A stretch of 64,000 nt of DNA, taken from Caecitellus pseudoparvulus (lineage: Eukaryota > Protista > Bigyra: Bicosoecida). The position numbers and the translations under genes are program-made. Shown here in pieces: positions 29,351 to 64,000 of this stretch; positions within the stretch are counted from its first letter, which is position 1, and each line of letters starts with the position of its first letter. The stretch is from assembly GCA_965644315.1 (NCBI GenBank), contig CBFFRQ010000069.1, forward strand, positions 806,001 to 870,000. The letters are read 5' to 3'. A model generated the notes under the pieces. It did not search any database, was not told where the DNA came from, and saw only the letters and a program-made list of their open reading frames with translations.

Positions 29351-32300
29351 CTAAAGAGACCCACGATAAAAAACGACGGCTACTCCAGAATCGTAAGAAG
29401 CTTGACCTGAACAGGACTCGAGAGAATGCCTGACAGCCGTTCCGGTCTCAACAGATGAAAAAACATCTACGTCGCACCCAACACCCACCCAGCCTCGCAC
29501 ACCCTCCACACCCCCATCGCCCTCCATCACACCGCTCACGCTGGACTCGCTCACACCCCCCACCACACGCACCACACGGCTGCCCACCCCCACGCCCGCA
29601 GCGCTGCTGCCCAGACCCACCTTCGTCACACGCACGTCGCCGTCCGAGCCACCCAGGGACACGCCCAGCTTGCCACCGCTCACCACGTGCCACACCTTCA
29701 TGTCGCCCCCGCTCCCCCCCACATCCACCACACGCCCACGCGCGTACCCTGACCCCCCACTGTACACCACGCCCCCACCCACATCACTCACACCCGCCAC
29801 GCCCAGCAGCCCCCCACCGCTGCCGCCCCCCCCGCTGCCGCTTCCGCTGCCGCCCCCCCCGCCGCCGAACAGGCCCCCACCGCCCAACAGACTCCCGCCG
29901 CCGCCACTCACCCCACCAAATAGACTCCCGCCCACACCGCCGCTGCCGAAGCTCAACCCTGCACCCACACCGACTGACTCACCACCACCACCACCGCCCC
30001 CAGACCCGCCCTCGCCGACGGACACCGCGTCGCCACCCCCATCACCAGCCCCACCACCCCACTCACCCTCACCACACCACACCACCACCGCCACGCCGCT
30101 CTCCTCGCTCGCGCCCTCCACAGCACCCTTCAATGTGCTCCCCAGCACGCGCCGGCTCTCACCGCCCCCCACCACGTCCACATCACATCCAACACCCACC
30201 CAGCCTCGCACACCCTCCACACCCCCATCGCCCTCCATCACACCGCTCACGCTGGACTCGCTCACACCCCCCACCACACGCACCACACGGCTGCCCACCC
30301 CCACGCCCGCAGCGCTGCTGCCCAGACCCACCTTCGTCACACGCACGTCGCCGTCCGAGCCACCCAGGGACACGCCCAGCTTGCCACCGCTCACCACGTG
30401 CCACACCTTCATGTCGCCCCCGCTCCCCCCCACATCCACCACACGCCCACGCGCGTACCCTGACCCCCCACTGTACACCACGCCCCCACCCACATCACTC
30501 ACACCCGCCACGCCCAGCAGCCCCCCACCGCTGCCGCCCCCGCCGCTGCCGCCCCCGCCGCCGCCGCCGCCGAACAGGCCCCCACCGCCCAAAAGACTCC
30601 CGCCCCCGCCACTCACCCCACCAAACAGACTCCCGCCCACACCGCCGCTGCCGAAGCTCAACCCTGCACCCACGCCAACTGACTCACCACCACCACCACC
30701 ACCACCCCCAGACCCGCCCTCGCCGACGGACACCGCGTCGCCACCCCCATCACCAGCCCCACCATCCCACTCACCCTCACCACACCACACCACCACCGCC
30801 ACGCCGCTCTCCTCGCTCGCGCCCTCCACAGCACCCTTCAATGTGCTCCCCAGCACGCGCCGGCTCTCACCACCCCCCACCACGTCCACATCACATCCAA
30901 CACCCACCCAGCCTCGCACACCCTCCACACCCCCATCGCCCTCCATCACACCGCTCACGCTGGACTCGCTCACACCCCCCACCACACGCACCACACGGCT
31001 GCCCACCCCCACGCCCGCAGCGCTGCTGCCCAGACCCACCTTCGTCACACGCACGTCGCCGTCCGAGCCACCCAGGGACACGCCCAGCTTGCCACCGCTC
31101 ACCACGTGCCACACCTTCATGTCGCCCCCGCTCCCCCCCACATCCACCACACGCCCACGCGCGTACCCTGACCCCCCACTGTACACCACGCCCCCACCCA
31201 CATCACTCACCCCCGCCACGCCCAGCAGCCCCCCGCCGCTGCCGCTGCCGCTGCCGCCCCCGCCGCTGCCGCCCCCGCCGCTGCCGAACAGGCCCCCACC
31301 GCCCAACAGACTCCCGCCCCCCCCACTCCCCCCACCAAACAGACTCCCGCCCACACCGCCGCTGCCGAAGCTCAACCCTGCACCCACACCGACTGACTCA
31401 CCACCACCACCACCGCCCCCAGACCCGCCCTCGCCGACGGACACCGCGTCGCCACCCCCATCACCAGCCCCACCATCCCACTCACCCTCACCACACCACA
31501 CCACCACCGCCACGCCGCTCTCCTCGCTCGCGCCCTCCACAGCACCCTTCAATGTGCTCCCCAGCACGCGCCGGCTCTCACCGCCCCCCACCACGTCCAC
31601 ATCACATCCAACACCCACCCAGCCTCGCACACCCTCCACACCCCCATCGCCCTCCATCACACCGCTCACGCTGGACTCGCTCACACCCCCCACCACACGC
31701 ACCACACGGCTGCCCACCCCCACGCCCGCAGCGCTGCTGCCCAGACCCACCTTCGTCACACGCACGTCGCCGTCCGAGCCACCCAGGGACACGCCCAGCT
31801 TGCCACCGCTCACCACGTGCCACACCTTCATGTCGCCCCCGCTCCCCCCCACATCCACCACACGCCCACGCGCGTACCCTGACCCCCCACTGTACACCAC
31901 GCCCCCACCCACATCACTCACACCCGCCACGCCCAGCAGCCCCCCGCCCCCGCCACCGCCGCTGCCGCTGCCGCCGCTGCCGCTGCTGCCGCCGCCGAAC
32001 AGGCCCCCACCGCCCAACAGACTCCCGCCCCCGCCACTCCCCCCACCAAACAGACTCCCGCCCACACCGCCGCTGCCGAAGCTCAACCCTGCACCCACAC
32101 CGACTGACTCACCACCACCACCACCGCCCCCAGACCCGCCCTCGCCGACGGACACCGCGTCGCCACCCCCATCACCAGCCCCACCATCCCACTCACCCTC
32201 ACCACACCACACCACCACCGCCACGCCGCTCTCCTCGCTCGCGCCCTCCACAGCACCCTTCAATGTGCTCCCCAGCACGCGCCGGCTCTCACCACCCCCC

Positions 32301-35300
32301 ACCACGTCCACATCACATCCAACACCCACCCAGCCTCGCACACCCTCCACACCCCCATCGCCCTCCATCACACCGCTCACGCTGGACTCGCTCACACCCC
32401 CCACCACACGCACCACACGGCTGCCCACCCCCACGCCCGCAGCGCTGCTGCCCAGACCCACCTTCGTCACACGCACGTCGCCGTCCGAGCCACCCAGGGA
32501 CACGCCCAGCTTGCCACCGCTCACCACGTGCCACACCTTCATGTCGCCCCCGCTCCCCCCCACATCCACCACACGCCCACGCGCGTACCCTGACCCCCCA
32601 CTGTACACCACGCCCCCACCCACATCACTCACACCCGCCACGCCCAGCAGCCCCCCGCCCCCGCCACCGCCGCTGCCGCTGCCGCCGCCGCCGAACAGGC
32701 CCCCACCGCCCAACAGACTCCCGCCCCCGCCACTCACCCCACCAAACAGACTCCCGCCCACACCGCCGCTGCCGAAGCTCAACCCTGCACCCACGCCAAC
32801 TGACTCACCACCACCACCACCACCCCCAGACCCGCCCTCGCCGACGGACACCGCGTCGCCACCCCCATCACCAGCCCCACCACCCCACTCACCCTCACCA
32901 CACCACACCACCACCGCCACGCCGCTCTCCTCGCTCGCGCCCTCCACAGCACCCTTCAATGTGCTCCCCAGCACGCGCCGGCTCTCACCGCCCCCCACCA
33001 CGTCCACATCACATCCAACACCCACCCAGCCTCGCACACCCTCCACACCCCCATCGCCCTCCATCACACCGCTCACGCTGGACTCGCTCACACCCCCCAC
33101 CACACGCACCACACGGCTGCCCACCCCCACGCCCGCAGCGCTGCTGCCCAGACCCACCTTCGTCACACGCACGTCGCCGTCCGAGCCACCCAGGGACACG
33201 CCCAGCTTGCCACCGCTCACCACGTGCCACACCTTCATGTCGCCCCCGCTCCCCCCCACATCCACCACACGCCCACGCGCGTACCCTGACCCCCCACTGT
33301 ACACCACGCCCCCACCCACATCACTCACCCCTGCCACGCCCAGCAGCCCCCCACCCCCGCCGCCGCCGCCGCTGCCGCTGCCGCTGCCGCCGCTGCCGCT
33401 GCTGCCGCCGCCGAACAGGCCCCCACCGCCCAACAGACTCCCGCCCCCCCCCCTCACCCCACCAAACAGACTCCCGCCCACACCGCCGCTGCCGAAGCTC
33501 AACCCTGCACCCACACCGACTGACTCACCACCACCACCACCGCCCCCAGACCCGCCCTCGCCGACGGACACCGCGTCGCCACCCCCATCACCAGCCCCAC
33601 CATCCCACTCACCCTCACCACACCACACCACCACCGCCACGCCGCTCTCCTCGCTCGCGCCCTCCACAGCACCCTTCAATGTGCTCCCCAGCACGCGCCG
33701 GCTCTCACCACCCCCCACCACGTCCACATCACATCCAACACCCACCCAGCCTCGCACACCCTCCACACCCCCATCGCCCTCCATCACACCGCTCACGCTG
33801 GACTCGCTCACACCCCCCACCACACGCACCACACGGCTGCCCACCCCCACGCCCGCAGCGCTGCTGCCCAGACCCACCTTCGTCACACGCACGTCGCCGT
33901 CCGAGCCACCCAGGGACACGCCCAGCTTGCCACCGCTCACCACGTGCCACACCTTCATGTCGCCCCCGCTCCCCCCCACATCCACCACACGCCCACGCGC
34001 GTACCCTGACCCCCCACTGTACACCACGCCCCCACCCACATCACTCACCCCCGCCACGCCCAGCAGCCCCCCGCCGCTGCCGCCGCCGCTGCCGCTCCCG
34101 CCGCTGCCGCCCCCGCCGCCGCCGCCGCCGAACAGGCCCCCACCGCCCAACAGACTCCCGCCCCCGCCACTCACCCCACCAAACAGACTCCCGCCCACAC
34201 CGCCGCTGCCGAAGCTCAACCCTGCACCCACACCGACTGACTCACCACCACCACCACCGCCCCCCAGACCCGCCCTCGCCGACGGACACCGCGTCGCCAC
34301 CCCCATCACCAGCCCCACCACCCCACTCACCCTCACCACACCACACCACCACCGCCACGCCGCTCTCCTCGCTCGCGCCCTCCACAGCACCCTTCAATGT
34401 GCTCCCCAGCACGCGCCGGCTCTCACCGCCCCCCACCACGTCCACATCACATCCAACACCCACCCAGCCTCGCACACCCTCCACACCCCCATCGCCCTCC
34501 ATCACACCGCTCACGCTGGACTCGCTCACACCCCCCACCACACGCACCACACGGCTGCCCACCCCCACGCCCGCAGCGCTGCTGCCCAGACCCACCTTCG
34601 TCACACGCACGTCGCCGTCCGAGCCACCCAGGGACACGCCCAGCTTGCCACCGCTCACCACGTGCCACACCTTCATGTCGCCCCCGCTCCCCCCCACATC
34701 CACCACACGCCCACGCGCGTACCCTGACCCCCCACTGTACACCACGCCCCCACCCACATCACTCACCCCCGCCACGCCCAGCAGCCCCCACCGCCGCCGC
34801 CGCCGCCGCTGCCGCCGCCGCCGCCGCCGCTCCGCCGCCGCCGCCGCCGAACAGGCCCCCACCGCCCAACAGACTCCCGCCGCCGCCACTCACCCCACCA
34901 AACAGACTCCCGCCCACACCGCCGCTGCCGAAGCTCAACCCTGCACCCACACCGACTGACTCACCACCACCACCACCACCACCCCCAGACCCGCCCTCGC
35001 CGACGGACACCGCGTCGCCACCCCCATCACCAGCCCCACCATCCCACTCACCCTCACCACACCACACCACCACCGCCACGCCGCTCTCCTCGCTCGCGCC
35101 CTCCACAGCACCCTTCAATGTGCTCCCCAGCACGCGCCGGCTCTCACCACCCCCCACCACGTCCACATCACATCCAACACCCACCCAGCCTCGCACACCC
35201 TCCACACCCCCATCGCCCTCCATCACACCGCTCACGCTGGACTCGCTCACACCCCCCACCACACGCACCACACGGCTGCCCACCCCCACGCCCGCAGCGC

Positions 35301-38300
35301 TGCTGCCCAGACCCACCTTCGTCACACGCACGTCGCCGTCCGAGCCACCCAGGGACACGCCCAGCTTGCCACCGCTCACCACGTGCCACACCTTCATGTC
35401 GCCCCCGCTCCCCCCCACATCCACCACACGCCCACGCGCGTACCCTGACCCCCCACTGTACACCACGCCCCCACCCACATCACTCACACCCGCCACGCCC
35501 AGCAGCCCCCCGCCCCCGCCACCGCCGCTGCCGCTGCCGCTGCCGCTGCCGCCCCCGCCGCCGCTGCCGCCGCCGCCGAACAGGCCCCCACCGCCCAACA
35601 GACTCCCGCCCCCGCCACTCACCCCACCAAACAGACTCCCGCCCACACCGCCGCTGCCGAAGCTCAACCCTGCACCCACACCGACTGACTCACCACCACC
35701 ACCACCGCCCCCCAGACCCGCCCTCGCCGACGGACACCGCGTCGCCACCCCCATCACCAGCCCCACCATCCCACTCACCCTCACCACACCACACCACCAC
35801 CGCCACGCCGCTCTCCTCGCTCGCGCCCTCCACAGCACCCTTCAATGTGCTCCCCAGCACGCGCCGGCTCTCACCACCCCCCACCACGTCCACATCACAT
35901 CCAACACCCACCCAGCCTCGCACACCCTCCACACCCCCATCGCCCTCCATCACACCGCTCACGCTGGACTCGCTCACACCCCCCACCACACGCACCACAC
36001 GGCTGCCCACCCCCACGCCCGCAGCGCTGCTGCCCAGACCCACCTTCGTCACACGCACGTCGCCGTCCGAGCCACCCAGGGACACGCCCAGCTTGCCACC
36101 GCTCACCACGTGCCACACCTTCATGTCGCCCCCGCTCCCCCCCACATCCACCACACGCCCACGCGCGTACCCTGACCCCCCACTGTACACCACGCCCCCA
36201 CCCACATCACTCACCCCCGCCACGCCCAGCAGCCCCCCGCCGCTGCCGCTGCCGCTGCCGCCCCCGCCGCTGCCGCCCCCGCCGCCGCCGCCGCCGAACA
36301 GGCCCCCACCGCCCAAAAGACTCCCGCCCCCGCCACTCACCCCACCAAACAGACTCCCGCCCACACCGCCGCTGCCGAAGCTCAACCCTGCACCCACACC
36401 GACTGACTCACCACCACCACCACCGCCCCCAGACCCGCCCTCGCCGACGGACACCGCGTCGCCACCCCCATCACCAGCCCCACCATCCCACTCACCCTCA
36501 CCACACCACACCACCACCGCCACGCCGCTCTCCTCGCTCGCGCCCTCCACAGCACCCTTCAATGTGCTCCCCAGCACGCGCCGGCTCTCACCGCCCCCCA
36601 CCACGTCCACATCACATCCAACACCCACCCAGCCTCGCACACCCTCCACACCCCCATCGCCCTCCATCACACCGCTCACGCTGGACTCGCTCACACCCCC
36701 CACCACACGCACCACACGGCTGCCCACCCCCACGCCCGCAGCGCTGCTGCCCAGACCCACCTTCGTCACACGCACGTCGCCGTCCGAGCCACCCAGGGAC
36801 ACGCCCAGCTTGCCACCGCTCACCACGTGCCACACCTTCATGTCGCCCCCGCTCCCCCCCACATCCACCACACGCCCACGCGCGTACCCTGACCCCCCAC
36901 TGTACACCACGCCCCCACCCACATCACTCACCCCTGCCACGCCCAGCAGCCCCCCACCGCTGCCGCCGCCGCCGCTGCCGCTGCCGCTGCCGCTGCCGCC
37001 CCCGCCGCCGCTGCCGCCGCCGCCGAACAGGCCCCCACCGCCCAACAGACTCCCGCCCCCGCCACTCACCCCACCAAACAGACTCCCGCCCACACCGCCG
37101 CTGCCGAAGCTCAACCCTGCACCCACGCCAACTGACTCACCACCACCACCACCACCACCCCCAGACCCGCCCTCGCCGACGGACACCGCGTCGCCACCCC
37201 CATCACCAGCCCCACCACCCCACTCACCCTCACCACACCACACCACCACCGCCACGCCGCTCTCCTCGCTCGCGCCCTCCACAGCACCCTTCAATGTGCT
37301 CCCCAGCACGCGCCGGCTCTCACCGCCCCCCACCACGTCCACATCACATCCAACACCCACCCAGCCTCGCACACCCTCCACACCCCCATCGCCCTCCATC
37401 ACACCGCTCACGCTGGACTCGCTCACACCCCCCACCACACGCACCACACGGCTGCCCACCCCCACGCCCGCAGCACTGCTGCCCAGACCCACCTTCGTCA
37501 CACGCACGTCGCCGTCCGAGCCACCCAGGGACACGCCCAGCTTGCCACCGCTCACCACGTGCCACACCTTCATGTCGCCCCCGCTCCCCCCCACATCCAC
37601 CACACGCCCACGCGCGTACCCTGATCCCCCACTGTACACCACGCCCCCACCCACATCACTCACCCCTGCCACCCCCAGCAGCCCCCCCCCCCCGCCACCG
37701 CCGCCCCGCCGCTGCCGCTGCCGCTGCCGCCCCCGCCGCTGCCGAACAGGCCCCCACCGCCCAACAGACTCCCGCCCCCGCCACTCACCCCACCAAACAG
37801 ACTCCCGCCCACACCGCCGCTGCCGAAGCTCAACCCTGCACCCACGCCAACTGACTCACCACCACCACCACCACCGCCCCCAGACCCGCCCTCGCCGACG
37901 GACACCGCGTCGCCACCCCCATCACCAGCCCCACCATCCCACTCACCCTCACCACACCACACCACCACCGCCACGCCGCTCTCCTCGCTCGCGCCCTCCA
38001 CAGCACCCTTCAATGTGCTCCCCAGCACGCGCCGGCTCTCACCGCCCCCCACCACGTCCACATCACATCCAACACCCACCCAGCCTCGCACACCCTCCAC
38101 ACCCCCATCGCCCTCCATCACACCGCTCACGCTGGACTCGCTCACACCCCCCACCACACGCACCACACGGCTGCCCACCCCCACGCCCGCAGCACTGCTG
38201 CCCAGACCCACCTTCGTCACACGCACGTCGCCGTCCGAGCCACCCAGGGACACGCCCAGCTTGCCACCGCTCACCACGTGCCACACCTTCATGTCGCCCC

Positions 38301-40451
38301 CGCTCCCCCCCACATCCACCACACGCCCACGCGCGTACCCTGACCCCCCACTGTACACCACGCCCCCACCCACATCACTCACCCCTGCCACGCCCAGCAG
38401 CCCCCCGCCCCCACCGCTGCCGCCCCCGCCGCTGCCGCTGCCGCTGCCGCTGCCGCCGCCGAACAGGCCCCCACCGCCCAACAGACTCCCGCCCCCGCCA
38501 CTCACCCCACCAAACAGACTCCCGCCCACACCGCCGCTGCCGAAGCTCAGTGATTGATCCGCAGGAATCGGTGTTACGGGGGCTTTGGTTGACTGGTGGT
38601 GAGTTCCTAACTCTCCGCCCTCGGCGGCTGCAGCAGGAGTCTTTATGAAGTCTGTTGGCCCCTCAGAATTTGACTGGAGAGGTAAGGCCAAATCTTTGGG
38701 TGAACGTTTTTCCTTGGTCTGAGTACCAGCAAAGACCACTCGCAGTGGGTTGTCATCCGTTATGCGTTGCTTCAATCGCTTGAGAAGCTTCTTTACTGCT
38801 GAGCTTGTCCAGGCCGAAACATCGTACTGGACCCCTTCAGGGACATCAGATGACCTTCCAGCTGGCCACTCAACGCTAAGAATCACGTCGTGCAACTGCA
38901 CAGTCCCAGCGCAAGCCCCGCTTGCAACTATATTCGAAACTGCAGCGCCAAGTCCCACAGAACCGCTGGACCACGGCTGCAGGTTCAACCCAAGCTTTGG
39001 GCTTGTGAAGCAGACTTCATACTGCCTGGGAAGGGCGTTGGCTTTGTCTGAGGTGCTTTGCTGGGCATCCTCCAAGGCTCGTGATTCAGCCGCCATCGCA
39101 GCTTGCGCAGCCTCCACGGCCTGCGGTGTCAGCACACCACAAGCTGACACAACAACGTTGTAGCCGCCTGTGGGAGCACAGTTGTTGGCCTTGTCCACTG
39201 GGAGACTCGCGATCTGAGATACAACAGGCAAGCCGCCTAGGACACGGCCAAAGACGGTGTGTTTGCCGTCCAAGTCTGGAGCAGGGACAGCGGTGATAAA
39301 CCACTGTGAAGTGTTGGTGTTGGGCCCCGAGTTTGCCATTGACAAGGCCCCTGCCTCGTGGCTCAAATCTGAGGGCTCGTCTTCAAAGGGGAGTCGATGG
39401 CTGAAGATGCTGCGGCCTCCCATGCCGTCTCCTCGAGTTATGTCACCCCCCTGGATCAAGCAGCTGGGCAAGATGCGTACAATCCGAGATCCCTCGTATG
39501 TGAGCTCTCCAGAGCTTGCTTGGAACCCCGTGCAAAGGCTGTAAAAGTTGAAGGCTGCCAGGGGTGCCTTATCGTGATAGAGCTTGAGCACGACACGGTT
39601 TGCGGGAAGCGCACCGTCCACCTGTACGGCGCTCTGATGCCATGGAACGGAGACACCATCCTTCGTGATAGCAAAGTCCATGTACACGTGGGTGTGGGCT
39701 TCCGGAAAGCTGCGCGCTCGCGCTTTGAGGTCTCCTGGTCCAGGCTGCGACACTGCGGGCGAGCCTCCCGCCCACGCACTGCCAAAGGTCGCATCAAGGA
39801 TCCCACTCGTGTTTGCAGTGGCATCAAAGGCAGATGCAATGAGGTCGGGAGATGCTGGTGTCAGGGCATCTCGCCCAAGAAGTGAAAGAGTTGCTGGGCT
39901 ACCCTCAACCTCCGCAGGGCTATCCACGTCAACGACCGGGTCGCGGGGCACAATGGGAGCCTCAGGGGATACTGTGGCTTGCTCTTCGCCAAGTGAGCTC
40001 TCTTGCTCTTGACTTTCTCCGGTACCTGGGCTTTGCCGCTGCTCAATCACGGGACGAGGCGTGCGCACTGTTGTACGTGTCGTGCTTGATACCTCAGGAC
40101 TCTCATCGGGCAAGCTGGCTCGAGCAGAAATGGCCGCAAATGCTCGATCCCGGGAGCTTCTCGGATCTGGCATGCTGTGGACGAAGTGGACAAAGGTGTT
40201 GCGATCTGTGGTGTGTATCAGCGCCAACGGCATCGCACCACGCACTTGAGCGGAGGAACAGATCCATCAGCTCGAGCCTTCCAATCCCACAAGTGTTCAT
40301 TGGCGAACCAAGTGAGGGCGGAGAGTGGCAACTTGGCTTCTTCATGCTCCATGCTATGTGCATGCTCCTCGGGGATCGATGCTGGAGGCTCGGGAAGGTC
40401 AGCAATGCTCTGCAGTGTCGTGCGGATTTTGGAGGCCTGCGCACAGTTCAC
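29351..40451 (-). CDS. Large cyclophilin-PDZ protein: cyclophilin domain, one unique PDZ-like domain, then 13 tandem [FG/Gly-rich linker + PDZ-like domain] units; four frameshifts in the array as assembled; 5' exons probably extend to ~40726
   Basis: Cyclophilin motifs NFYSLCTG, QGGDITRGDGMGG, LSMANSGPNTNTSQWFIT and LDGKHTVFGRV (~39200-39690). PDZ-like YEVCFTSPKLGLNL...VQLHDVILSV (~38735-39020). The ORF continues in frame into the repeats and ends at TAG 29351. A phase-consistent 71-nt intron lies at 40175-40245. Further upstream exons are unresolved. Confidence 0.75.
29478..38549 (-). repeat. Coding tandem array, 13 PDZ-like cores, period ~696-732 bp, near-identical; length variation confined to Gly/Ser microsatellite-like linkers
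   Basis: The same marker recurs at 29693, 30404, 31112, 31823, 32534, 33230, 33950, 34668, 35389, 36116, 36833, 37565 and 38284. The + strand is extremely C/A-rich, so the sense strand is G/T-rich. Confidence 0.97.
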
Positions 40452-46774: not shown

Positions 46775-46857
46775 AATGCAAGCACTGGGGCTTCCAGCCT
46801 GCTCTGTTTTTGGCTTGACTACTGGATTCGGCCTGGCCCGCTCCATTTCAGGCCGTG

Positions 46858-53318: not shown

Positions 53319-54311
53319 TCAAGCAAAGTCCTTCACCTCATCCAGTGGGTTTGCTTGGGACCTGTCCCCTGCTGCAGGAGGCACGCTGCGGGCAGTGCTT
53401 GCAGATGCAGCGCCGCCCATGCGGTGCAGCATGACGAGAAGTGCAACTGTGCCGACAAAAGCCGCTCCACTGAAGCACAGAGCGAACGTGATGAAAAACC
53501 TGCGCAAAATGGGGACTGGAGTGCACCTTGGCGAGGGTGGTGGTGAAAGGCAACGAGCTCGCACCATCCAACAGAGTACTCAAAGTCAGCATTGTTGAAG
53601 CTGAACTGCTTCAGAATTTCCCCCGCCATGGCGTTCGCAGCAGAGGCCAGCCCCATTGCAATCAAGCCGGAAAGGAAACTCAAGCCAGCAAGGACACACA
53701 TCGCGATGAAGATGGTTCGAGAAATGGCCCCTCCTCGAGTATATGACAGAATACCGCTGACCGTTGCAGTCAGAAAGCTGCAGATGGCAACCACAATGGC
53801 AAAGCCCCACGCAGCGCGCATGCGTCCCATGACATCCTTTTGGGTGTCAGTCAGTGGGTCAGATGGCTCCTCCCCTGTGAGAGAGAGGAGGATGTGCCCG
53901 AACGCTCGCAGGTGTCGAGAGCCAGGTGATGCATAAACGCACAGTCGAAGCAGGTCAGACCGTTCTTGATGGCCGAGTTCTTACTCTCTGTGACCTTCCT
54001 GCACCAAGTGACCGGCCCGAAGAAAAATTGCACTTTGCCAGCCTGCGAAGCGAGCAAACCAGGCAGCTGGCGGCGTCCATCGGCTGCCACCGCGAGAACC
54101 GGCCAAACTGACATCTGCCACGGGGTTGTTCAATGATACGAAAGACCACATATCAGTCACTGCCAGGCTGATCCCAGAAAAGAAGATTGCGGCGAGTGAG
54201 GCCACGAGAACTGCAAGGTGCAGCGGCGGTGGCGTGCCGTGAAAGTGCAGTGCAGCAGGCTTGCTGCGTGGGGTGCGACAAACCTCCGAGCAAAACCCTG
54301 CTGACATTCAT
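53319..54311 (-). CDS. Claudin/PMP22-superfamily four-TM protein, 238 aa; exons 54311-54284, 54210-54113, 54042-53943, 53874-53565, 53499-53319
   Basis: Four phase-consistent GT-AG introns (73, 70, 68, 65 nt). Spliced layout: TM1, then W...FGPVTWC...C loop, MRAAWGFAIV TM2, TM3, YSVGWFF TM4. This is the W-GLW-C-C / YxxGW layout of the superfamily. Confidence 0.75.
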
Positions 54312-55494
54312 GGTGACTCAAGTGGCACCTCCCTGAAGCTTATGAGCGCAGTTCACGGCGCTGGAGTGTCTCAGGCAGCCGCGCACGGTTTGGTTGCGGA
54401 AATCGGTGTGGCAGCAGGCCTGGAGAAGTAGCTTGCAGCGCCGTCAGTGTGACGAGGCGGGGAGAATTTGAATCATTGGAGAGCGTTTTGTTGAGTAATG
54501 TTTATGTCGGTGTACTCTGTGGGCCAGCCCGACAAAGGGCGGAAAGGCCCCGTGGACACGTAGCTTGGGACACCCGTCTGTATCGGCCCCAGGTCGGACG
54601 CGCGAGGTCGAGCGAGCCAGCGACAAAACTAAACCTAACCTCACGTATCTCACTTTGGGGTATGTCAAGACTTGATGTACGCAATTGAAGCAAAAGTCCC
54701 TGACTCCAGTGATCGTCGTGCGGCTTACTCTCAACCACGGTCCGCACCACCTGGAGCTCCTGCGGCCCAGCACAGTGAAAAGGCTTGCTCCCTAACTGAC
54801 AGGGCAGCTGTAGGGTACGTTTAGCTCCACCAACGCACTGATTGCGTCTCTTTTGCGTGTGCGTGCCTTGCTGCGAGGCAGTGGTGCACGGCGTTCTTCG
54901 GCGGGCTGCATGCGGCAGTTCTCCAAGCTCCATGGACGAAGCAGCGCTTGCACACACACGACCGGCAGCTTTCCGTGGCCGGCGAAAAGTTGATTGTGGA
55001 GATTGGTTGCCTGGCTGGCCCTGTATAAATGCCTGCGAACCCACGTGCCTGTGTCGAGCATGAGCTGTGCGCGCACCAGCACCCCGTCTAGCTCAACCAT
55101 CCCACCATGTGCTTGCTGCGCACGTCGCTGCGCGATTTGTGCTCTGAGTGTTGACAATGCCAGTACCCTGTTGATGCCTCATGAATTTCTGGGCTGGTGG
55201 CCTTCCTCTGCGGGCGGTGCTCCAGGGTTCACGAAGTGTGTCGGTGGGCGACACGCCTTTCGGCACGTTTCAACGCGCTGTGTCCAAGACCTCGCCCCAG
55301 CGCCGTGAAGTCCGAGGCAAGGGAGTGTTTCATTCTGTACATTGCTCAGCGCCCATGCCCCTGCGTCATCTGTCGCTGAATCGCTGTTGTCCTCGCCCAG
55401 AGACCTGCCTATTTTTACTTCCACACCGCAACTTCCGCCCCTTACAGAGCGAGCTTGCTGCACCAGGAACCGCGGAGGGCCTCCAGAGGTCATC
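54312..55494. promoter_or_regulatory. Divergent intergenic region between claudin-like and cadherin genes
   Basis: Longest non-coding gap in the window (~1.18 kb). TATAAAT at 55024-55030. No convincing ORF. Confidence 0.35.
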
Positions 55495-58400
55495 ATGATG
55501 GGCCCCTCACACATAGTCCTTGGTGTTCTCTTGCTGAGCAGAGTTGCAGCAGCCATGCTTCCTACAGAGTGTGCAGCTGGAGGCGCCGTGAACTGCACCA
55601 TGGTTGAAGGTGTAAATGCCTCACAGTCCCTCTGCTGGCAAGAGACACTTCAAGTCCCAGAGAGGACACCGGACTGGCACCGTTTGTTGCCATCTCGTGC
55701 TTTGGAGAGCATGTTCAGTGTTTTCAATGGTCCCAGCACGTTCGCTTCGCCCAACTACACCGACGTTGTTTGGTCATCCAATCGTAAGTCTGACAGCTCC
55801 CAAGGTCTCTCTCTGCGTGCAGTTGGCAGCATGATCACGCCCCCACAATCTGCACAGAGACGGACTTTGAGCTCAAGCTGGATGCGGGCTCCATGGCGCA
55901 GGATGTGAACTCTAGCATCGGGTGGAGGGATGCCGGGCACACGCTTGGGCTGGGCTACAACTCTTCGAATGATGAGTACTTCCTGACCTCCAGCGTACCA
56001 CTCGACTTCGAAACTGCAAAGGATCAAGGAAACGGCACCCGCATTCTCTATGCCTTGGTGTCTGCCTGCCGCGGGGGGGACTACAACACAAACTGTTCGA
56101 GCCTAACGAACACCACTGGGACACAGGCTGAAGCATTCCGAAACCCAACCGGAGCAGACCAAGCAAATCAATCACTCGCGGCTGAGATCCGAAGTGTGTG
56201 TGTGGTCCTGGAGGTTATGGATGAACCAGAAGCACCTGAGTTGGCGTCGGGCCCCAGTGCTGTGTCTGTGGCCGAGGAGGCGGCGGGCGTGGAGGTGGGC
56301 ACCTTTGCGGTGTTTGACCAGGACGCCGGGTCGACGCTGACGTGGAACATCAGCGACGTGTCCCCATGGAGCGGGTGGGGCTTGTTCGAGCTGAACAGCA
56401 CCGACACGACGGACGGCACGTGGGGTGTGAAGACCATGCGCGTGGCGGGCGTGCTGGACTACGAGGATGCACGGGAGTACAACGTGACGCTGACTGTGAG
56501 CGACGGCAGCCTGAACCTGACCCACGTGGTGCGTGTGGAGGTGGTGGATGTGAACGACCCGCCGGTGTTCGTGTCGTGGAGCGCCAATGCGGTGGTGTTT
56601 GAGAACGAGGGGGGTGTGTCGTTTGGGGACGCGTTGGTGGTGATGGACGAGGACGTGGGCGACGTCTTGACGTGGTCTGTGGTGAGCGTGTCGCCTGTGA
56701 ACGGCAGCGCGTTGATCAGGCTGAACGACAGCAGCACCAGCGTGGGGGGTCCTGCAGGGACAGGCCGGCAGTTGGAGGTGGCGGTGGCGGAGGGTCTGGA
56801 CTACGAGGCGTGGCCGGAGTACAACGTGACGGTGTCTGTGCAGGACAGCGCGGGGAACGAGTCGGTGGTGGTGGTGCGGGTGCAGGTGGTGGACACGGCT
56901 GACCCGCCGATGTTGGCGTCGGGCCCCAGTGCTGTGTCTGTGGCCGAGGAGGCGGCGGGCGTGGAGGTGGGCACCTTTGCGGTGTTTGACCAGGACGCCG
57001 GGTCGACGCTGACGTGGAACATCAGCGACGTGTCCCCATGGAGCGGGTGGGGCTTGTTCGAGCTGAACAGCACCGACACGACGGACGGCACGTGGGGTGT
57101 GAAGACCATGCGCGTGGCGGGCGTGCTGGACTACGAGGATGCACGGGAGTACAACGTGACGCTGACTGTGAGCGACGGCAGCCTGAACCTGACCCACGTG
57201 GTGCGTGTGGAGGTGGTGGATGTGAACGACCCGCCGGTGTTCGTGTCGTGGAGCGCCAATGCGGTGGTGTTTGAGAACGAGGGGGGTGTGTCGTTTGGGG
57301 ACGCGTTGGTGGTGGTGGACGAGGACGTGGGCGACGTCTTGACGTGGTCTGTGGTGAGCGTGTCGCCTGTGAACGGCAGCGCGTTGATCAGGCTGAACGA
57401 CAGCAGCACCAGCGTGGGGGGTCCTGCAGGGACAGGCCGGCAGTTGGAGGTGGCGGTGGCGGAGGGTCTGGACTACGAGGCGTGGCCGGAGTACAACGTG
57501 ACGGTGTCTGTGCAGGACAGCGCGGGGAACGAGTCGGTGGTGGTGGTGCGGGTGCAGGTGGTGGACACGGCTGACCCGCCGATGTTGGCGTCGGGCCCCA
57601 GCGCTGTGTTTGTGGCCGAGGAGGCGGCGGGCGTGGAGGTGGGCACCTTTGCGGTGTTTGACCAGGACGCCGGGTCGACGCTGACGTGGAACATCAGCGA
57701 CGTGTCCCCATGGAGCGGGTGGGGCTTGTTCGAGCTGAACAGCACCGACACGACGGACGGCACGTGGGGTGTGAAGACCATGCGCGTGGCGGGCGTGCTG
57801 GACTACGAGGATGCACGGGAGTACAACGTGACGCTGACTGTGAGCGACGGCAGCCTGAACCTGACCCACGTGGTGCGTGTGGAGGTGGTGGATGTGAACG
57901 ACCCGCCGGTGTTCGTGTCGTGGAGCGCCAATGCGGTGGTGTTTGAGAACGAGGGGGGTGTGTCGTTTGGGGACGCGTTGGTGGTGGTGGACGAGGACGT
58001 GGGCGACGTCTTGACGTGGTCTGTGGTGAGCGTGTCGCCTGTGAACGGCAGCGCGTTGATCAGGCTGAACGACAGCAGCACCAGCGTGGGGGGTCCTGCA
58101 GGGACAGGCCGGCAGTTGGAGGTGGCGGTGGCGGAGGGTCTGGACTACGAGGCATGGCCGGAGTACAACGTGACGGTGTCTGTGCAGGACAGCGCGGGGA
58201 ACGAGTCGGTGGTGGTGGTGCGGGTGCAGGTGGTGGACACGGCTGACCCGCCGATGTTGGCGTCGGGCCCCAGCGCTGTGTCTGTGGCCGAGGAGGCGGC
58301 GGGCGTGGAGGTGGGCACCTTTGCGGTGTTTGACCAGGACGCCGGGTCGACGCTGACGTGGAACATCAGCGACGTGTCCCCATGGAGCGGGTGGGGCTTG

Positions 58401-61400
58401 TTCGAGCTGAACAGCACCGACACGACGGACGGCACGTGGGGTGTGAAGACCATGCGCGTGGCGGGCGTGCTGGACTACGAGGATGCACGGGAGTACAACG
58501 TGACGCTGACTGTGAGCGACGGCAGCCTGAACCTGACCCACGTGGTGCGTGTGGAGGTGGTGGATGTGAACGACCCGCCGGTGTTCGTGTCGTGGAGCGC
58601 CAATGCGGTGGTGTTTGAGAACGAGGGGGTGTGTCGTTTGGGGACGCGTTGGTGGTGGTGGACGAGGACGTGGGCGACGTCTTGACGTGGTCTGTGGTGA
58701 GCGTGTCGCCTGTGAACGGCAGCGCGTTGATCAGGCTGAACGACAGCAGCACCAGCGTGGGGGGTCCTGCAGGGACAGGCCGGCAGTTGGAGGTGGCGGT
58801 GGCGGAGGGTCTGGACTACGAGGCGTGGCCGGAGTACAACGTGACGGTGTCTGTGCAGGACAGCGCGGGGAACGAGTCGGTGGTGGTGGTGCGGGTGCAG
58901 GTGGTGGACACGGCTGACCCGCCGATGTTGGCGTCGGGCCCCAGTGCTGTGTCTGTGGCCGAGGAGGCGGCGGGCGTGGAGGTGGGCACCTTTGCGGTGT
59001 TTGACCAGGACGCCGGGTCGACGCTGACGTGGAACATCAGCGACGTGTCCCCATGGAGCGGGTGGGGCTTGTTCGAGCTGAACAGCACCGACACGACGGA
59101 CGGCACGTGGGGTGTGAAGACCATGCGCGTGGCGGGCGTGCTGGACTACGAGGATGCACGGGAGTACAACGTGACGCTGACTGTGAGCGACGGCAGCCTG
59201 AACCTGACCCACGTGGTGCGTGTGGAGGTGGTGGATGTGAACGACCCGCCGGTGTTCGTGTCGTGGAGCGCCAATGCGGTGGTGTTTGAGAACGAGGGGG
59301 TGTGTCGTTTGGGGACGCGTTGGTGGTGGTGGACGAGGACGTGGGCGACGTCTTGACGTGGTCTGTGGTGAGCGTGTCGCCTGTGAACGGCAGCGCGTTG
59401 ATCAGGCTGAACGACAGCAGCACCAGCGTGGGGGGTCCTGCAGGGACAGGCCGGCAGTTGGAGGTGGCGGTGGCGGAGGGTCTGGACTACGAGGCGTGGC
59501 CGGAGTACAACGTGACGGTGTCTGTGCAGGACAGCGCGGGGAACGAGTCGGTGGTGGTGGTGCGGGTGCAGGTGGTGGACACGGCTGACCCGCCGATGTT
59601 GGCGTCGGGCCCCAGTGCTGTGTCTGTGGCCGAGGAGGCGGCGGGCGTGGAGGTGGGCACCTTTGCGGTGTTTGACCAGGACGCCGGGTCGACGCTGACG
59701 TGGAACATCAGCGACGTGTCCCCATGGAGCGGGTGGGGCTTGTTCGAGCTGAACAGCACCGACACGACGGACGGCACGTGGGGTGTGAAGACCATGCGCG
59801 TGGCGGGCGTGCTGGACTACGAGGATGCACGGGAGTACAACGTGACGCTGACTGTGAGCGACGGCAGCCTGAACCTGACCCACGTGGTGCGTGTGGAGGT
59901 GGTGGATGTGAACGACCCGCCGGTGTTCGTGTCGTGGAGCGCCAATGCGGTGGTGTTTGAGAACGAGGGGGGTGTGTCGTTTGGGGACGCGTTGGTGGTG
60001 GTGGACGAGGACGTGGGCGACGTCTTGACGTGGTCTGTGGTGAGCGTGTCGCCTGTGAACGGCAGCGCGTTGATCAGGCTGAACGACAGCAGCACCAGCG
60101 TGGGGGGTCCTGCAGGGACAGGCCGGCAGTTGGAGGTGGCGGTGGCGGAGGGTCTGGACTACGAGGCGTGGCCGGAGTACAACGTGACGGTGTCTGTGCA
60201 GGACAGCGCGGGGAACGAGTCGGTGGTGGTGGTGCGGGTGCAGGTGGTGGACACGGCTGACCCGCCGATGTTGGCGTCGGGCCCCAGTGCTGTGTCTGTG
60301 GCCGAGGAGGCGGCGGGCGTGGAGGTGGGCACCTTTGCGGTGTTTGACCAGGACGCCGGGTCGACGCTGACGTGGAACATCAGCGACGTGTCCCCATGGA
60401 GCGGGTGGGGCTTGTTCGAGCTGAACAGCACCGACACGACGGACGGCACGTGGGGTGTGAAGACCATGCGCGTGGCGGGCGTGCTGGACTACGAGGATGC
60501 ACGGGAGTACAACGTGACGCTGACTGTGAGCGACGGCAGCCTGAACCTGACCCACGTGGTGCGTGTGGAGGTGGTGGATGTGAACGACCCGCCGGTGTTC
60601 GTGTCGTGGAGCGCCAATGCGGTGGTGTTTGAGAACGAGGGGGGTGTGTCGTTTGGGGACGCGTTGGTGGTGGTGGACGAGGACGTGGGCGACGTCTTGA
60701 CGTGGTCTGTGGTGAGCGTGTCGCCTGTGAACGGCAGCGCGTTGATCAGGCTGAACGACAGCAGCACCAGCGTGGGGGGTCCTGCAGGGACAGGCCGGCA
60801 GTTGGAGGTGGCGGTGGCGGAGGGTCTGGACTACGAGGCATGGCCGGAGTACAACGTGACGGTGTCTGTGCAGGACAGCGCGGGGAACGAGTCGGTGGTG
60901 GTGGTGCGGGTGCAGGTGGTGGACACGGCTGACCCGCCGATGTTGGCGTCGGGCCCCAGCGCTGTGTCTGTGGCCGAGGAGGCGGCGGGCGTGGAGGTGG
61001 GCACCTTTGCGGTGTTTGACCAGGACGCCGGGTCGACGCTGACGTGGAACATCAGCGACGTGTCCCCATGGAGCGGGTGGGGCTTGTTCGAGCTGAACAG
61101 CACCGACACGACGGACGGCACGTGGGGTGTGAAGACCATGCGCGTGGCGGGCGTGCTGGACTACGAGGATGCACGGGAGTACAACGTGACGCTGACTGTG
61201 AGCGACGGCAGCCTGAACCTGACCCACGTGGTGCGTGTGGAGGTGGTGGATGTGAACGACCCGCCGGTGTTCGTGTCGTGGAGCGCCAATGCGGTGGTGT
61301 TTGAGAACGAGGGGGTGTGTCGTTTGGGGACGCGTTGGTGGTGGTGGACGAGGACGTGGGCGACGTCTTGACGTGGTCTGTGGTGAGCGTGTCGCCTGTG

Positions 61401-64000
61401 AACGGCAGCGCGTTGATCAGGCTGAACGACAGCAGCACCAGCGTGGGGGGTCCTGCAGGGACAGGCCGGCAGTTGGAGGTGGCGGTGGCGGAGGGTCTGG
61501 ACTACGAGGCATGGCCGGAGTACAACGTGACGGTGTCTGTGCAGGACAGCGCGGGGAACGAGTCGGTGGTGGTGGTGCGGGTGCAGGTGGTGGACACGGC
61601 TGACCCGCCGATGTTGGCGTCGGGCCCCAGTGCTGTGTCTGTGGCCGAGGAGGCGGCGGGCGTGGAGGTGGGCACCTTTGCGGTGTTTGACCAGGACGCC
61701 GGGTCGACGCTGACGTGGAACATCAGCGACGTGTCCCCATGGAGCGGGTGGGGCTTGTTCGAGCTGAACAGCACCGACACGACGGACGGCACGTGGGGTG
61801 TGAAGACCATGCGCGTGGCGGGCGTGCTGGACTACGAGGATGCACGGGAGTACAACGTGACGCTGACTGTGAGCGACGGCAGCCTGAACCTGACCCACGT
61901 GGTGCGTGTGGAGGTGGTGGATGTGAACGACCCGCCGGTGTTCGTGTCGTGGAGCGCCAATGCGGTGGTGTTTGAGAACGAGGGGGGTGTGTCGTTTGGG
62001 GACGCGTTGGTGGTGGTGGACGAGGACGTGGGCGACGTCTTGACGTGGTCTGTGGTGAGCGTGTCGCCTGTGAACGGCAGCGCGTTGATCAGGCTGAACG
62101 ACAGCAGCACCAGCGTGGGGGGTCCTGCAGGGACAGGCCGGCAGTTGGAGGTGGCGGTGGCGGAGGGTCTGGACTACGAGGCATGGCCGGAGTACAACGT
62201 GACGGTGTCTGTGCAGGACAGCGCGGGGAACGAGTCCGTGGTGGTGGTGCGTGTCTCCGTTGTAAATATCGATGAGCCCCCTGATGTCGACGTTGCGGCA
62301 ACCCGGTTTGTTGGTGAATTGTCTCTCGTTGGTCAGTGTATTGCTCCTGATTTGATTGCCATTGACCCAGATTTTCCAAGTAGCAATGTCAGCTATTTCT
62401 TGGCAAGTTCGACGCCTGACTCCGGAACTTGGACGGTGTTAAACGTGTCAAGTTCTCCTTGGACTGGTTGCCTTCAGCTTCAAGCCCCCCTTGATCAAGA
62501 AACTACGAGCTCGTTTCTTCTGCAGATTTCGTATTGCGACAAGGAGGGTCTGGCAGGCTCCGTATGCACGCAGCAGTCCCTGACCATCGTTGTTGGTGAT
62601 GAGCCTGAGCCTCCCACAGATTTTCTGCCTTCCATTCCAGTGGACGTATTTGAGAATGCCACGGCGGGCCACCTTATCGCGCCAGTTTCAGCCTACGATC
62701 CTGAGGGCGCAGACCTTACATTTTTGTTGGCTGAACCTGCAGTCAATTTGTCTCTTGCGAGCATAGGAGGGGCGGACGGTGAGCTGCGCGTGGCTACCAG
62801 CCTTGATTTTGAGCAAGTTTCACAGTACACTTTGAACGTGTCTGTGACTGACAATCAGACCTTGACTAGCTACTTTGCACTCGTTGTTAATGTGCTGGAT
62901 GTAGACGAGGCTCCCGACCCGAACCCGCGACCGCTGTTCATTGACGAGAACTCTCCGATAGGCTCGCTCATCTTCGAAATGACGGCTTTCGATCCTGAGT
63001 CAGACACGCTCACATGGTCTCTACCGCCCGGAGCCACGCCTGATCAATCAAGTGTTTCCATTGCGCCCAGCTCTGGCACTCTGACTTCAGCAGTTGTGTT
63101 CAACTTTGAAGCTCGCAGCCAGTACTGGCTTCAGATTAATGCCACTGATTCTGCACTGAACACAGGCGGGCGGCTGTTTTCCCTCAGCGTGAATGATGTG
63201 CAAGAGCCACCAGAAGCCATCGACGCGTCAGTGTCATTGGTGGAGAACTCAGCTGCTGGGACCTTAGTCCACAGCTTGAGTTTCACCGACCCTGAAGATG
63301 GAATTGCCAACAAAGTCATCTCCATCATCCAAGGTGACAGCGATGGATTGTTCCAGATCTCCAACACGGGGGCACTTGAGCTCTCCCGTAGCGGTCCAAA
63401 TTTTGAGGAGGATCCTGTGTTCAACCTGACCATTCTAGTTGAAGACGCCACAGGTCTCAACACCACCGCGAGAGTTAATGTGACTGTGGTTGATGTCAAT
63501 GAGGCACCTCTCATTTCAGCTGGTCAGCTGTTCTCTGTCAACGAAACGGCAGATATGGGCTTTGCTTTCTCTGCCCCGGTGGTGGGTTGGGATGTGGACA
63601 ACGACACGGGCTTGGTGTGGACTCTTACAGGTGGTAATGTCAACAACGTCTTCGCTATCGACAGCGCGGGTTACCTATCAGTGGCTGACAATTCCACCCT
63701 TGACTTTGAAACCAGGCCTTCGTACTCTCTGACAGTTGAACTGTCCGATGGGTCGCTGAGTGACACCAAAGTTGTGACTGTGCAAGTTTTAGACCAGAAC
63801 GACATCCCTGTTCTTTCTCCAGTCAATTTCACCATAGCCGAGAACACCGCTGGGGGCACCCTCATCAGCACAGGGGGTCAACCAAGCTTGCTGCCCTTGG
63901 TGAACTACACGTCTGATGAAGACTCCGCCCCGGGTTTCGCACAGCCGTTTTCCTTTGAAGTACTTGCGGGCGACAGTCGGTTTGAAGTGTCTGCAGACGG
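55495..64000 (+). CDS. Giant cadherin-repeat protein (at least 24 EC domains in the window), open at the window end; exon 1 55495-55783, exon 2 from 55858; three -1 frameshifts in the array as assembled
   Basis: Signal peptide MMGPSHIVLGVLLLSRVAAA. 74-nt GTAAGT..CAG intron 55784-55857. Repeated xEN/xEE, DxD, LDYE/LDFE and DVNDPP/DVNEAP calcium-binding motifs. Divergent EC repeats continue after 62250. Confidence 0.9.
56241..62250 (+). repeat. Coding tandem array of ~9 x 672 bp units (224 aa, two cadherin EC domains each), nearly identical
   Basis: Units start with ttggcgtcgggccccag at 56241, 56913, 57585, 58257, 58928, 59599, 60271, 60943 and 61614. They differ only by a few SNPs and G6/G5 indels. 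Confidence 0.98.

What the first reader, a model, noticed from the sequence alone, without database searches (positions are those of the whole stretch)
29351..62250. Two homogenised coding arrays on opposite strands are both driven to G-richness on their own sense strand
Seen: the PDZ array (29478-38549, - strand gene) and the cadherin array (56241-62250, + strand gene) are unrelated, yet both use overwhelmingly G-rich codons (GTG, GCG, GAG, GGN, plus ACG/CCG in the cadherin) inside the repeats. Both switch abruptly to ordinary mixed codons at the array edges. Because the genes face opposite ways, the skew follows transcription direction rather than the chromosome strand. The diverged Cys-rich repeat genes in the same window show no such skew. 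Established: GC-biased gene conversion is strand-symmetric and should raise C as well as G. G-rich non-template strands favour R-loops and G-quadruplexes, as in immunoglobulin switch regions. Inference: a transcription-oriented conversion or expansion process preferentially fixes sense-strand G variants while homogenising the units. This is my best candidate for an undescribed system.
Basis: partly seen in the sequence, partly recalled or inferred. Interest (0 to 1): 0.85.

Follow-up and report, generated by a model that had tools for sequence, protein, structure and literature searches.

The report
G-rich codons in homogenised coding arrays
Two unrelated, almost perfectly repeated stretches of protein-coding DNA in a marine protist use guanine-ending codons far more than any ordinary gene nearby, always on the strand that is read. 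The excess is real and no standard explanation accounts for it, but its cause and its link to transcription are still unproven.

Summary

**What is there**
- Array A (29463-38549, minus sense) has 13 units of about 715 bp.
- Array B (56241-62250, plus sense) has 9 units of 672 bp and is cadherin by Pfam.
- In 264 kb of contiguous sequence these are the only repeats of at least 90% identity and the only strongly skewed segments.
- GC content and skew change within about 60 bp of the array edges.

**How strong it is**
- At fourfold sites G is 0.51 (A) and 0.70 (B), against 0.27 in the background. A is 0.03-0.04 against 0.20.
- C does not rise, so symmetric GC-biased conversion alone fails.

**Explanations tested and rejected**
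- Amino-acid composition (p = 1e-8 and 3e-6 per single unit).
- Codon optimisation: EF-1alpha and EF-2 use C-ending codons.
- CpG context.
- Regional replication skew.

**Other points**
- Amino-acid content has also shifted towards G-rich codons.
- Canonical G-quadruplex motifs are not shared by the two arrays, but R-loop-type G clusters are, on the sense strand only.
- Short motif samples from three further near-identical arrays (contigs C147/C188, C37, C10) point the same way; a two-copy duplicate on C127 does not.
- "PDZ" is supported only by language-model similarity.
- A transcription-oriented process is plausible but not shown.
- Unchecked notes from this scan report G-skewed homogenised blocks elsewhere in this genome.

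The parts
29463..38549 (-). Array A. It has 12.7 units of 696-732 bp. Each unit is a Gly/Ser FG-type linker (SFG, SLFG, GLFG motifs) followed by a Gly/Val-rich PDZ-like domain. Sense-strand G is 0.57. Frame breaks in units 7-13 fall in G homopolymers or in the GGC/AGC linker.
29351..29462 (-). Unhomogenised relic of the last third of a unit, plus the stop codon. It has ordinary composition (T 0.37, G 0.25). It stays in register with the unit: SGVAVV is conserved while every third codon position differs.
29284..29289 (-). AATGCA motif 61 nt after the stop codon on the minus strand. This is the genome's recurrent 3'-end motif and supports minus-strand transcription of array A.
   Evidence: 7 of 13 genes have it within 200 nt of the stop, against a background of 0.2 per kb per strand.
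38550..40245 (-). Unique N-terminal part of the array A gene. It holds a cyclophilin domain (about 39184-39603) and a normal-composition PDZ-like domain (38719-39021). Its codon usage is ordinary.
55893..56240 (+). Unique 5' coding part of the giant cadherin gene, with ordinary codons (G3 0.27, A3 0.21).
56241..62250 (+). Array B. It has 8.95 units of 672 bp, each encoding two cadherin domains. Fourfold G is 0.70 and Val is 19.6%. Three units are 671 bp because of a 1-base difference in a G run.
62251..64000 (+). Continuation of the same cadherin gene, with diverged cadherin domains and ordinary codons. The open frame runs on to about 10.9 kb past the window end.

Best explanation
Both stretches are coding tandem arrays kept near-identical by ongoing unequal exchange or gene conversion. 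Their unit sequences have been pushed away from the genome's normal composition by a non-adaptive, fixation- or mutation-level bias tied to that homogenisation.

One part of the bias is the known GC enrichment of concertedly evolving DNA: A- and T-ending codons are lost, CpG is no longer depleted, and the boundaries coincide with the repeat edges.

A second, strand-asymmetric part places the gained G:C pairs with G on the sense (non-template) strand. It acts at synonymous and replacement sites alike (Ile to Val, Lys to Glu or Arg, enrichment of GNN-encoded residues).

The result is a sense strand that meets R-loop-forming criteria. That may feed back on recombination and keep the array homogenised.

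Shown: the arrays, the G-specific bias, its confinement to the arrays, and its independence from amino-acid content, optimal codons, CpG context and regional skew. Inferred: that homogenisation causes it, and that transcription (rather than replication direction) gives it its polarity.
For: - The two arrays are the only repeats of at least 90% identity and the only strongly skewed segments in 264 kb, and the edges coincide within about 60 bp.
- GC rises from about 0.5-0.57 to 0.65-0.72, and CpG observed/expected rises from 0.77 to 1.08 inside the arrays. Raised GC and GC3 in converted regions is a recognised hallmark (PMC2720389, read).
- Fourfold G is 0.51 and 0.70 with C at 0.24 and 0.17. 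After amino-acid adjustment p = 1e-8 and 3e-6. The G preference holds before every following base.
- EF-1alpha and EF-2 use C at 0.61-0.67 of fourfold sites.
- In the cadherin array Val is 19.6% against 9.0%, Ile 0.9% against 3.8%, Lys 0.4% against 2.4%, and GNN-encoded residues 53% against 38% in the rest of the same gene.
- Comparing the relic with the array unit, 42 of 66 differences gain G in the array.
- Sense-only RLFS-type G clusters occur at 42 and 4 per kb, against 0.2 per kb in the background (criteria after PMC6125637).
- Other near-identical arrays show the same direction at sampled fourfold sites. C147/C188 has G8:C1, while flanking domains of the same gene have mixed codons. C37 and C10 also have G > C. 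Pooled, G13:C3.
Against: - Only two arrays were analysed in full. The three extra arrays rest on 3-12 fourfold sites each, in Val/Leu-rich motifs that favour G anyway (pooled p about 0.05).
- A 1.5-kb-spaced identical duplicate on C127 has ordinary codons, and the C10 array keeps GAA and TCT.
- No substitution could be polarised. There are no close relatives, and the relic comparison is saturated (61% of sites differ).
- No expression, R-loop or replication data could be obtained.
- Ordinary and highly expressed genes show no sense G excess, so simple transcription-associated mutation cannot be the whole story.
- In array A, selection for a Gly/Val-rich, FG-type protein could explain positions 1 and 2.
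Confidence: 0.45

Rival explanations
1. Reversed causation or ascertainment. Units that already had a G-rich non-template strand are R-loop-prone and break-prone, so they are the ones that get amplified and kept homogenised. Nothing drives them towards G afterwards.
For: Both arrays meet R-loop-forming criteria on the sense strand only. G-rich non-template repeats that promote R-loops and instability are established (PMC3990486 and PMC6125637). Nothing here orders G-enrichment relative to amplification.
Against: The relic next to array A and the neighbouring cadherin domains have ordinary composition. The ancestor would therefore have had to be an outlier among its paralogues. The amino-acid shifts look like sustained pressure.
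Confidence: 0.15
2. The polarity follows replication direction, not transcription. An origin lies between the two divergently oriented genes, and array-specific fork stalling or template switching amplifies a leading-strand G+T bias.
For: The G+T-rich strands point away from the 38.5-56 kb interval in both arrays, as expected for leading strands. Other notes from this scan report skew-switch islands in this genome (unchecked).
Against: There is no skew in the 17.7 kb between the arrays or in their flanks, and no low-GC gene-free island there. Arrays on C147(+), C188(-), C37(-) and C10(-) all have G on the sense strand. That would require each to be co-oriented with its fork.
Confidence: 0.1
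3. Selection on the product or the mRNA. Array A would be a Gly/Val/Ser-rich FG-type cohesive or elastic protein. Both arrays might also need particular codons or unstructured, C-poor mRNA.
For: Array A has Gly 39%, Val 18% and SFG/SLFG/GLFG linkers. Any selection on mRNA is sense-oriented by nature.
Against: Fourfold sites show the bias after amino-acid adjustment. The cadherin array has no such protein-level rationale. The preferred codons are the opposite of those in EF-1alpha and EF-2. A-ending rare codons are avoided rather than used, which argues against selection for slow translation.
Confidence: 0.1
4. Coincidence of orientation. Homogenised arrays drift to strong skew for array-specific reasons, but which strand becomes G-rich is arbitrary with respect to the gene.
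For: Two fully analysed arrays give only a 1-in-2 chance agreement. Another note from this scan describes blocks with 'C-rich to G-rich gradients' (unchecked).
Against: 5 of 5 sampled arrays have sense G > C, although three rest on tiny samples.
Confidence: 0.15
5. RNA-mediated homogenisation. cDNA copied from the (possibly A-to-I edited) mRNA recombines back into the array. This would homogenise units, remove A from the sense strand, and fit the intron-poor genome.
For: A3 is 0.02-0.03, and twofold purine-ending codons are 100% G-ending. The bias would be transcript-oriented by construction. Such a reverse-transcription plus editing model has been discussed for strand asymmetries (PMC2927911).
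Against: Gains of G come equally from T, C and A in the relic comparison. C and T are also depleted in array B. I did not search for a reverse transcriptase or editing enzyme.
Confidence: 0.05

Closest known systems
GC enrichment of concertedly evolving gene copies (GC-biased gene conversion; Galtier 2003 for histones, cited in PMC2720389)
   Same: Near-identical paralogous sequence has raised GC and GC3 relative to its flanks, with boundaries at the conversion tract.
   Different: Here only G rises on the sense strand, and C falls at fourfold sites. The known process is symmetric between strands.
[quoted passage not shown]
   Same: There is an excess of G, and of T over A, on the sense strand.
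   Different: Ordinary and highly expressed genes of this genome lack the asymmetry. The magnitude is far larger, and it is confined to repeats.
Immunoglobulin switch regions and other R-loop-forming G-rich tandem repeats (PMC6125637, PMC3990486)
   Same: Tandem units carry G clusters and at least 40% G on the non-template strand. The predicted R-loop polarity matches the gene direction.
   Different: These are long (672-720 bp) protein-coding units inside exons. No deaminase targeting is known, and R-loops were not measured.
GC-rich hypervariable minisatellites with a G-rich strand (CEB1, CEB25; PMC3486850)
   Same: GC-rich tandem arrays with strand asymmetry and instability.
   Different: The units here are about ten times longer and coding. 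Array B has no canonical G-quadruplex motif.

Membership tests
GC-biased gene conversion signature | Homogenised paralogous tracts with GC/GC3 above their flanks, and boundaries that coincide | tested here: met
   GC is 0.65-0.72 inside against 0.47-0.57 outside, with the jump within about 60 bp of the array edges. GC at fourfold sites is 0.75 and 0.87 against 0.56.
GC-biased gene conversion signature | Strand symmetry: both G and C rise at silent sites | tested here: not met
   Fourfold C is 0.24 and 0.17 against 0.29 in the background, while G is 0.51 and 0.70 against 0.27. p = 1e-8 and 3e-6 against the high-GC3 gene null.
Transcription-associated mutational asymmetry | G+T excess on the sense strand | tested here: met
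   Sense GC skew is +0.58 and +0.32. T exceeds A on the sense strand (AT skew 0.33 and 0.07).
Transcription-associated mutational asymmetry | Present across transcribed genes and stronger in highly expressed ones | tested here: not met
   Ordinary ORFs have an overall sense skew within about ±0.17, and a mean fourfold G-C skew of -0.05. EF-1alpha and EF-2 have third-position (GC3) skews of -0.29 and -0.23.
Transcription-associated mutational asymmetry | A-to-G transitions dominate the substitution spectrum | tested here: inconclusive
   From relic to array: T-to-G 20, C-to-G 14, A-to-G 8. The comparison is saturated, with 66 of 108 sites different.
R-loop-forming G-rich tandem repeats (switch-region-like) | G-cluster initiation zone followed by at least 100 nt of at least 40% G on the non-template strand | tested here: met
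   383 and 24 hits on the sense strand, 0 on the antisense strand, against a background of 0.2 per kb. The numeric thresholds are from my memory of the QmRLFS model. The concept is from PMC6125637.
R-loop-forming G-rich tandem repeats (switch-region-like) | R-loops actually form, and the region is transcribed in that direction | not testable with these tools
Orientation is supported only by the ORF, Pfam, relic conservation and the AATGCA 3' motif.
G-quadruplex-prone minisatellite | Canonical G4 motifs (four runs of G3 or more, with loops of 1-7) in each unit | tested here: not met
   8 motifs in 9 kb of array A and 0 in array B.
PDZ domain (array A unit) | Significant match to PDZ profile models or to solved PDZ chains | tested here: not met
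   No Pfam hit at E <= 0.01. There were no PDZ chains in the PDB sequence search. BLASTP of the unit against the upstream domain gave E = 0.9.
PDZ domain (array A unit) | PDZ-like features or fold | tested here: inconclusive
   The nearest language-model clusters are all PDZ (0.94 for the upstream domain, 0.91 for the unit). Single-sequence AlphaFold models had pLDDT 47 and 36.
Cadherin domain (array B unit) | Match to Pfam PF00028 above the gathering score | tested here: met
   E = 1.2e-45, 154 bits, 7 stretches. 4820 library proteins matched at E <= 0.001.

The most novel reading that the evidence does not exclude
In this protist, the machinery that homogenises coding tandem arrays carries a transcript-oriented bias that writes G onto the non-template strand at silent and replacement sites alike. 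One possible route is repair of lesions or abasic sites on R-loop-exposed DNA, or strand-directed correction of heteroduplex. The outcome is a self-reinforcing loop between G-skew, R-loops and recombination. This would be a strand-asymmetric counterpart of GC-biased gene conversion, and it would reshape protein composition.
Probability: 0.3. Interest if true: 0.8.

Novelty: new variant of a known kind. Interest (0 to 1): 0.6.

Why it matters
If the rule holds genome-wide, it would be a directional, strand-specific force acting on repeated coding DNA. It is strong enough to override codon preference and to change amino-acid content: Ile to Val, loss of Lys, and extreme Gly/Val domains.

That would affect several things:
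- how repeat proteins evolve;
- how composition is used to infer selection or gene conversion;
- how R-loop-prone sequence arises.

It would also make one question directly testable in a small, intron-poor genome: do recombination-associated biases have a transcriptional polarity? At least five suitable arrays are available.

If the rule fails, the finding reduces to two striking but idiosyncratic arrays.

Tried and rejected
**Explanations tested and rejected**
- *Codon optimisation.* EF-1alpha and EF-2 use C-ending fourfold codons.
- *Amino-acid composition alone.* The per-unit test against high-GC3 genes rejects it.
- *CpG avoidance or next-base context.* G is preferred before every following base, and CpG observed/expected is 1.08 in the arrays.
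- *Regional replication skew.* The flanks and the inter-array interval have zero skew.
- *Shared G-quadruplex potential.* There is none in array B.
- *The plus-strand Pro/Thr-rich reading of array A.* It is disfavoured by in-register relic conservation with silent differences, the stop codon followed by the AATGCA motif, and continuity with the cyclophilin ORF.

**Dead ends**
I did not try to read further sequence by anchored patterns.
- The look-up of encoding contigs leaves out this genome.
- There are no homologues of the post-cyclophilin region.
- The best cadherin relatives are at most 41% identical, and none of the 150 listed has near-identical internal repeats. Sister-species polarisation was therefore impossible.
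- Within-array variants are few and mostly in the GGC/AGC linker.
- Single-sequence structure models had low confidence.
- The ankyrin, Sel1 and classical DxNDNxP motif surveys found no periodic arrays.
- TRF and self-BLAST found no further arrays in the 264 kb apart from the RPB1 CTD heptads.


Full report
**Setting.** The window is contig C69:806001-870000 of a 30.6-Mb, 215-contig eukaryotic assembly. Earlier notes from this scan call it a marine protist. GC is about 0.6, and the genes are long and mostly intron-free. I extended the window by 200 kb to make a contiguous 264-kb sample. After that no more genomic DNA could be drawn.

**The two arrays.**
- Array A (29463-38549) has 13 copies spaced 696-732 bp. 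The domain-coding part is identical in all copies, and variation is confined to a GGC/AGC linker.
- Array B (56240-62251) has nine 671-672-bp copies at 99.3-100% identity. Each encodes two Pfam cadherin domains.
- Frame breaks in both arrays lie in G homopolymers or in the linker. They are probably assembly errors, but I could not check this against reads.
- Self-BLAST and TRF show that these are the only repeats of at least 90% identity in the 264 kb.

**Strand of array A.** All six frames are open there, and the plus strand reads as a Pro/Thr-rich protein. Four observations favour the minus strand:
- The frame continues from a cyclophilin domain.
- The array ends in a 36-codon relic that stays in register with the unit. 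Eleven residues are identical, including SGVAVV, and ten of those eleven use a different codon. The relic then reaches a stop codon.
- AATGCA follows that stop by 61 nt. The motif lies within 200 nt of the stop in 7 of 13 local genes, against a background of 0.2 per kb.
- The language-model neighbours of both the upstream domain and the unit are PDZ clusters.

Pfam, PDB sequence search, BLASTP and single-sequence folding give no PDZ support. "PDZ-like" is therefore a lead, not a finding. Each unit also carries SFG/SLFG/GLFG linkers.

**The composition anomaly.**
- Plus-strand GC skew is -0.58 in A and +0.32 in B.
- Outside the arrays, 600-bp windows have mean 0.00, sd 0.073 and extremes -0.24 and +0.28. 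Skew and GC content switch within about 60 bp of the array edges.
- Sense-strand G by codon position is 0.70/0.55/0.47 in A and 0.51/0.22/0.57 in B. A3 is 0.03 and 0.02, against 0.12-0.21 elsewhere.
- At fourfold sites G is 0.51 and 0.70, against 0.27 in the background. C is 0.24 and 0.17, against 0.29. A is 0.04 and 0.03, against 0.20.
- Twofold purine-ending codons are 100% G-ending.
- Among 71 ORFs, ordinary genes lie between -0.45 and +0.27 in fourfold G-C skew. The rest of the cadherin gene itself is at +0.08.

**Ordinary explanations tested.**
- *Optimal codons.* EF-1alpha and EF-2 use C at 0.61-0.67 of fourfold sites and G at 0.15-0.20. The arrays are therefore anti-optimal.
- *Amino-acid content.* I used nine high-GC3 ordinary genes as a per-amino-acid null. 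One cadherin unit has G92:C22 against an expected G share of 0.55 (p = 1.3e-8). One unit of array A has G84:C39 against 0.47 (p = 3e-6).
- *Context.* Ordinary genes avoid C before G. The arrays prefer G before every following base, and their CpG observed/expected is 1.08 against 0.77.
- *Symmetric GC-biased conversion.* This would raise C as well, and C falls.
- *Regional replication skew.* The 17.7 kb between the arrays and all the flanks are unskewed.
- *The one other skewed segment.* The only other skewed stretch in the 264 kb is the RNA polymerase II CTD heptad array. It is C-rich on its sense strand purely through Ser/Pro/Thr content, and its units are only 82-86% identical.

**Replacement sites.** The pressure reaches amino-acid content too. 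The cadherin array has Val 19.6%, against 9.0% in the 4209 residues of the same gene downstream. Ile is 0.9% against 3.8%, Lys 0.4% against 2.4%, and GNN-encoded residues 53% against 38%. Array A is 39% Gly and 18% Val. Between the relic and the array unit, 66 of 108 sites differ, and 42 of those changes gain G in the array (T-to-G 20, C-to-G 14, A-to-G 8). That comparison is saturated, so it shows the end state and not the mutational spectrum.

**Structures.** Canonical G-quadruplex motifs are enriched in A (8) but absent from B. R-loop-forming criteria are a G-cluster initiation zone followed by 100 nt of at least 40% G. The concept is from PMC6125637, and the numeric thresholds are from my memory. 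Both arrays meet these criteria in every unit on the sense strand and never on the antisense strand: 42 and 4 hits per kb, against 0.2 in the background.

**Other arrays.** Short cadherin-motif pattern searches of the whole assembly print the matched letters, which exposed further near-identical arrays.
- *C147 (+), period 2256 bp, at least 4 copies.* Its counterpart on C188 (-) may be a haplotig. Eighteen codons were read, giving fourfold G8:C1:A1:T2. Two non-array domains of the same gene use mixed A/T/C-ending codons.
- *C37 (-), period 336 bp, 3 copies.* The sampled codons include CTG, GAG, GTG and GGG.
- *C10 (-), period 1845 bp.* This one is less extreme: TCG and ACG, but also GAA and TCT.
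- *Pooled.* These give fourfold G13:C3 (p = 0.047 against the 0.58 share I took as the high-GC3 null).
- *Six comparable third positions of the first motif.* The two independent arrays have G at 11 of 12, against 57 of 126 in 21 non-array domains (my hand count; Fisher p = 0.002).
- *Possible counter-example.* A two-copy identical Sel1-like duplicate on C127 has ordinary codons at five fourfold sites.
- *Dispersed identical pairs.* C20/C68, C32/C65 and C62/C89 look ordinary.

These samples are small and come from Val/Leu-rich motifs. They raise my belief in a genome-wide rule but do not establish it. Unchecked first-reader notes from this scan (s1-642246, s1-677891, s1-642335, s1-636270) report GC-rich, G-skewed homogenised blocks elsewhere in this genome.

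**Interpretation.** Raised GC and GC3 in concertedly evolving sequence is textbook (PMC2720389). What is unusual is that the gain is G on one strand only. Transcription-associated asymmetry has the right sign (PMC2927911), but it is absent from ordinary and highly expressed genes here.

I therefore favour a homogenisation-linked bias with a strand-asymmetric component (confidence 0.45). The polarity is most simply read as transcript-oriented, because all sampled arrays carry G on the sense strand whatever their contig strand. Reversed causation, replication polarity, product-level selection, chance orientation and RNA-mediated homogenisation all remain open.

Noticed in passing
window 29351-40245 (-): Unusual gene architecture: cyclophilin, then a normal-composition PDZ-like domain, then about 13 units of FG/GLFG-type Gly/Ser linker plus a Gly/Val-rich PDZ-like domain. 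No homologues were found for the post-cyclophilin part.
   Followed up: partly
window 34391-38549 and 58173-61529: Frame breaks in both arrays sit in G homopolymers or in the GGC/AGC linker (unit lengths 718, 721, 727 and 719 bp; three cadherin units of 671 bp). These are likely long-read homopolymer errors. I could not check them against reads.
   Followed up: partly
L026-L027, C69:953933-954583 (264-kb coordinates 147933-148583), minus-strand gene: The RNA polymerase II largest subunit carries about 28 YSPTSPA heptads. The DNA units are only 82-86% identical, with scrambled silent sites. The sense strand is C-rich through amino-acid content.
   Followed up: yes
264-kb sample, just downstream of stop codons: AATGCA lies within 200 nt after the stop codon in 7 of 13 genes, against 0.2 per kb per strand overall. 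This agrees with earlier notes of a non-canonical 3'-end signal.
   Followed up: partly
G000 C147:25964-32786 (+), C188:6352-10918 (-), C37:89761-90464 (-), C10:7673-9549 (-): Further near-identical cadherin-type tandem arrays with periods 2256, 2256, 336 and 1845 bp. C147 and C188 carry the same array with one silent difference, so they may be haplotigs or an inverted duplicate.
   Followed up: partly
G000 C20/C68, C32/C65, C62/C89: Cadherin motif hits occur as identical or near-identical pairs on different contigs. This suggests uncollapsed haplotigs or large segmental duplications. Their codons look ordinary.
   Followed up: no
264-kb sample, ordinary genes: Codon choice depends strongly on context. 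At fourfold sites C is 0.50 before A but only 0.20 before G, and genome CpG observed/expected is 0.77.
   Followed up: partly
L001 (C69:283738-287400) and L005 (C78:238111-241830): EF-1alpha and EF-2 show extreme C-ending codon usage (fourfold C 0.61-0.67, A 0.01). This defines the optimal-codon set of this organism.
   Followed up: yes
window 56693-56712 and the equivalent position in each cadherin unit (first array unit; the same 20-mer sits at 57953-57972 in the unit analysed): The only G-cluster initiation motif in the cadherin unit (G6 TGTGTCGTTT G4) is also the site of the 1-base length differences between units.
   Followed up: no
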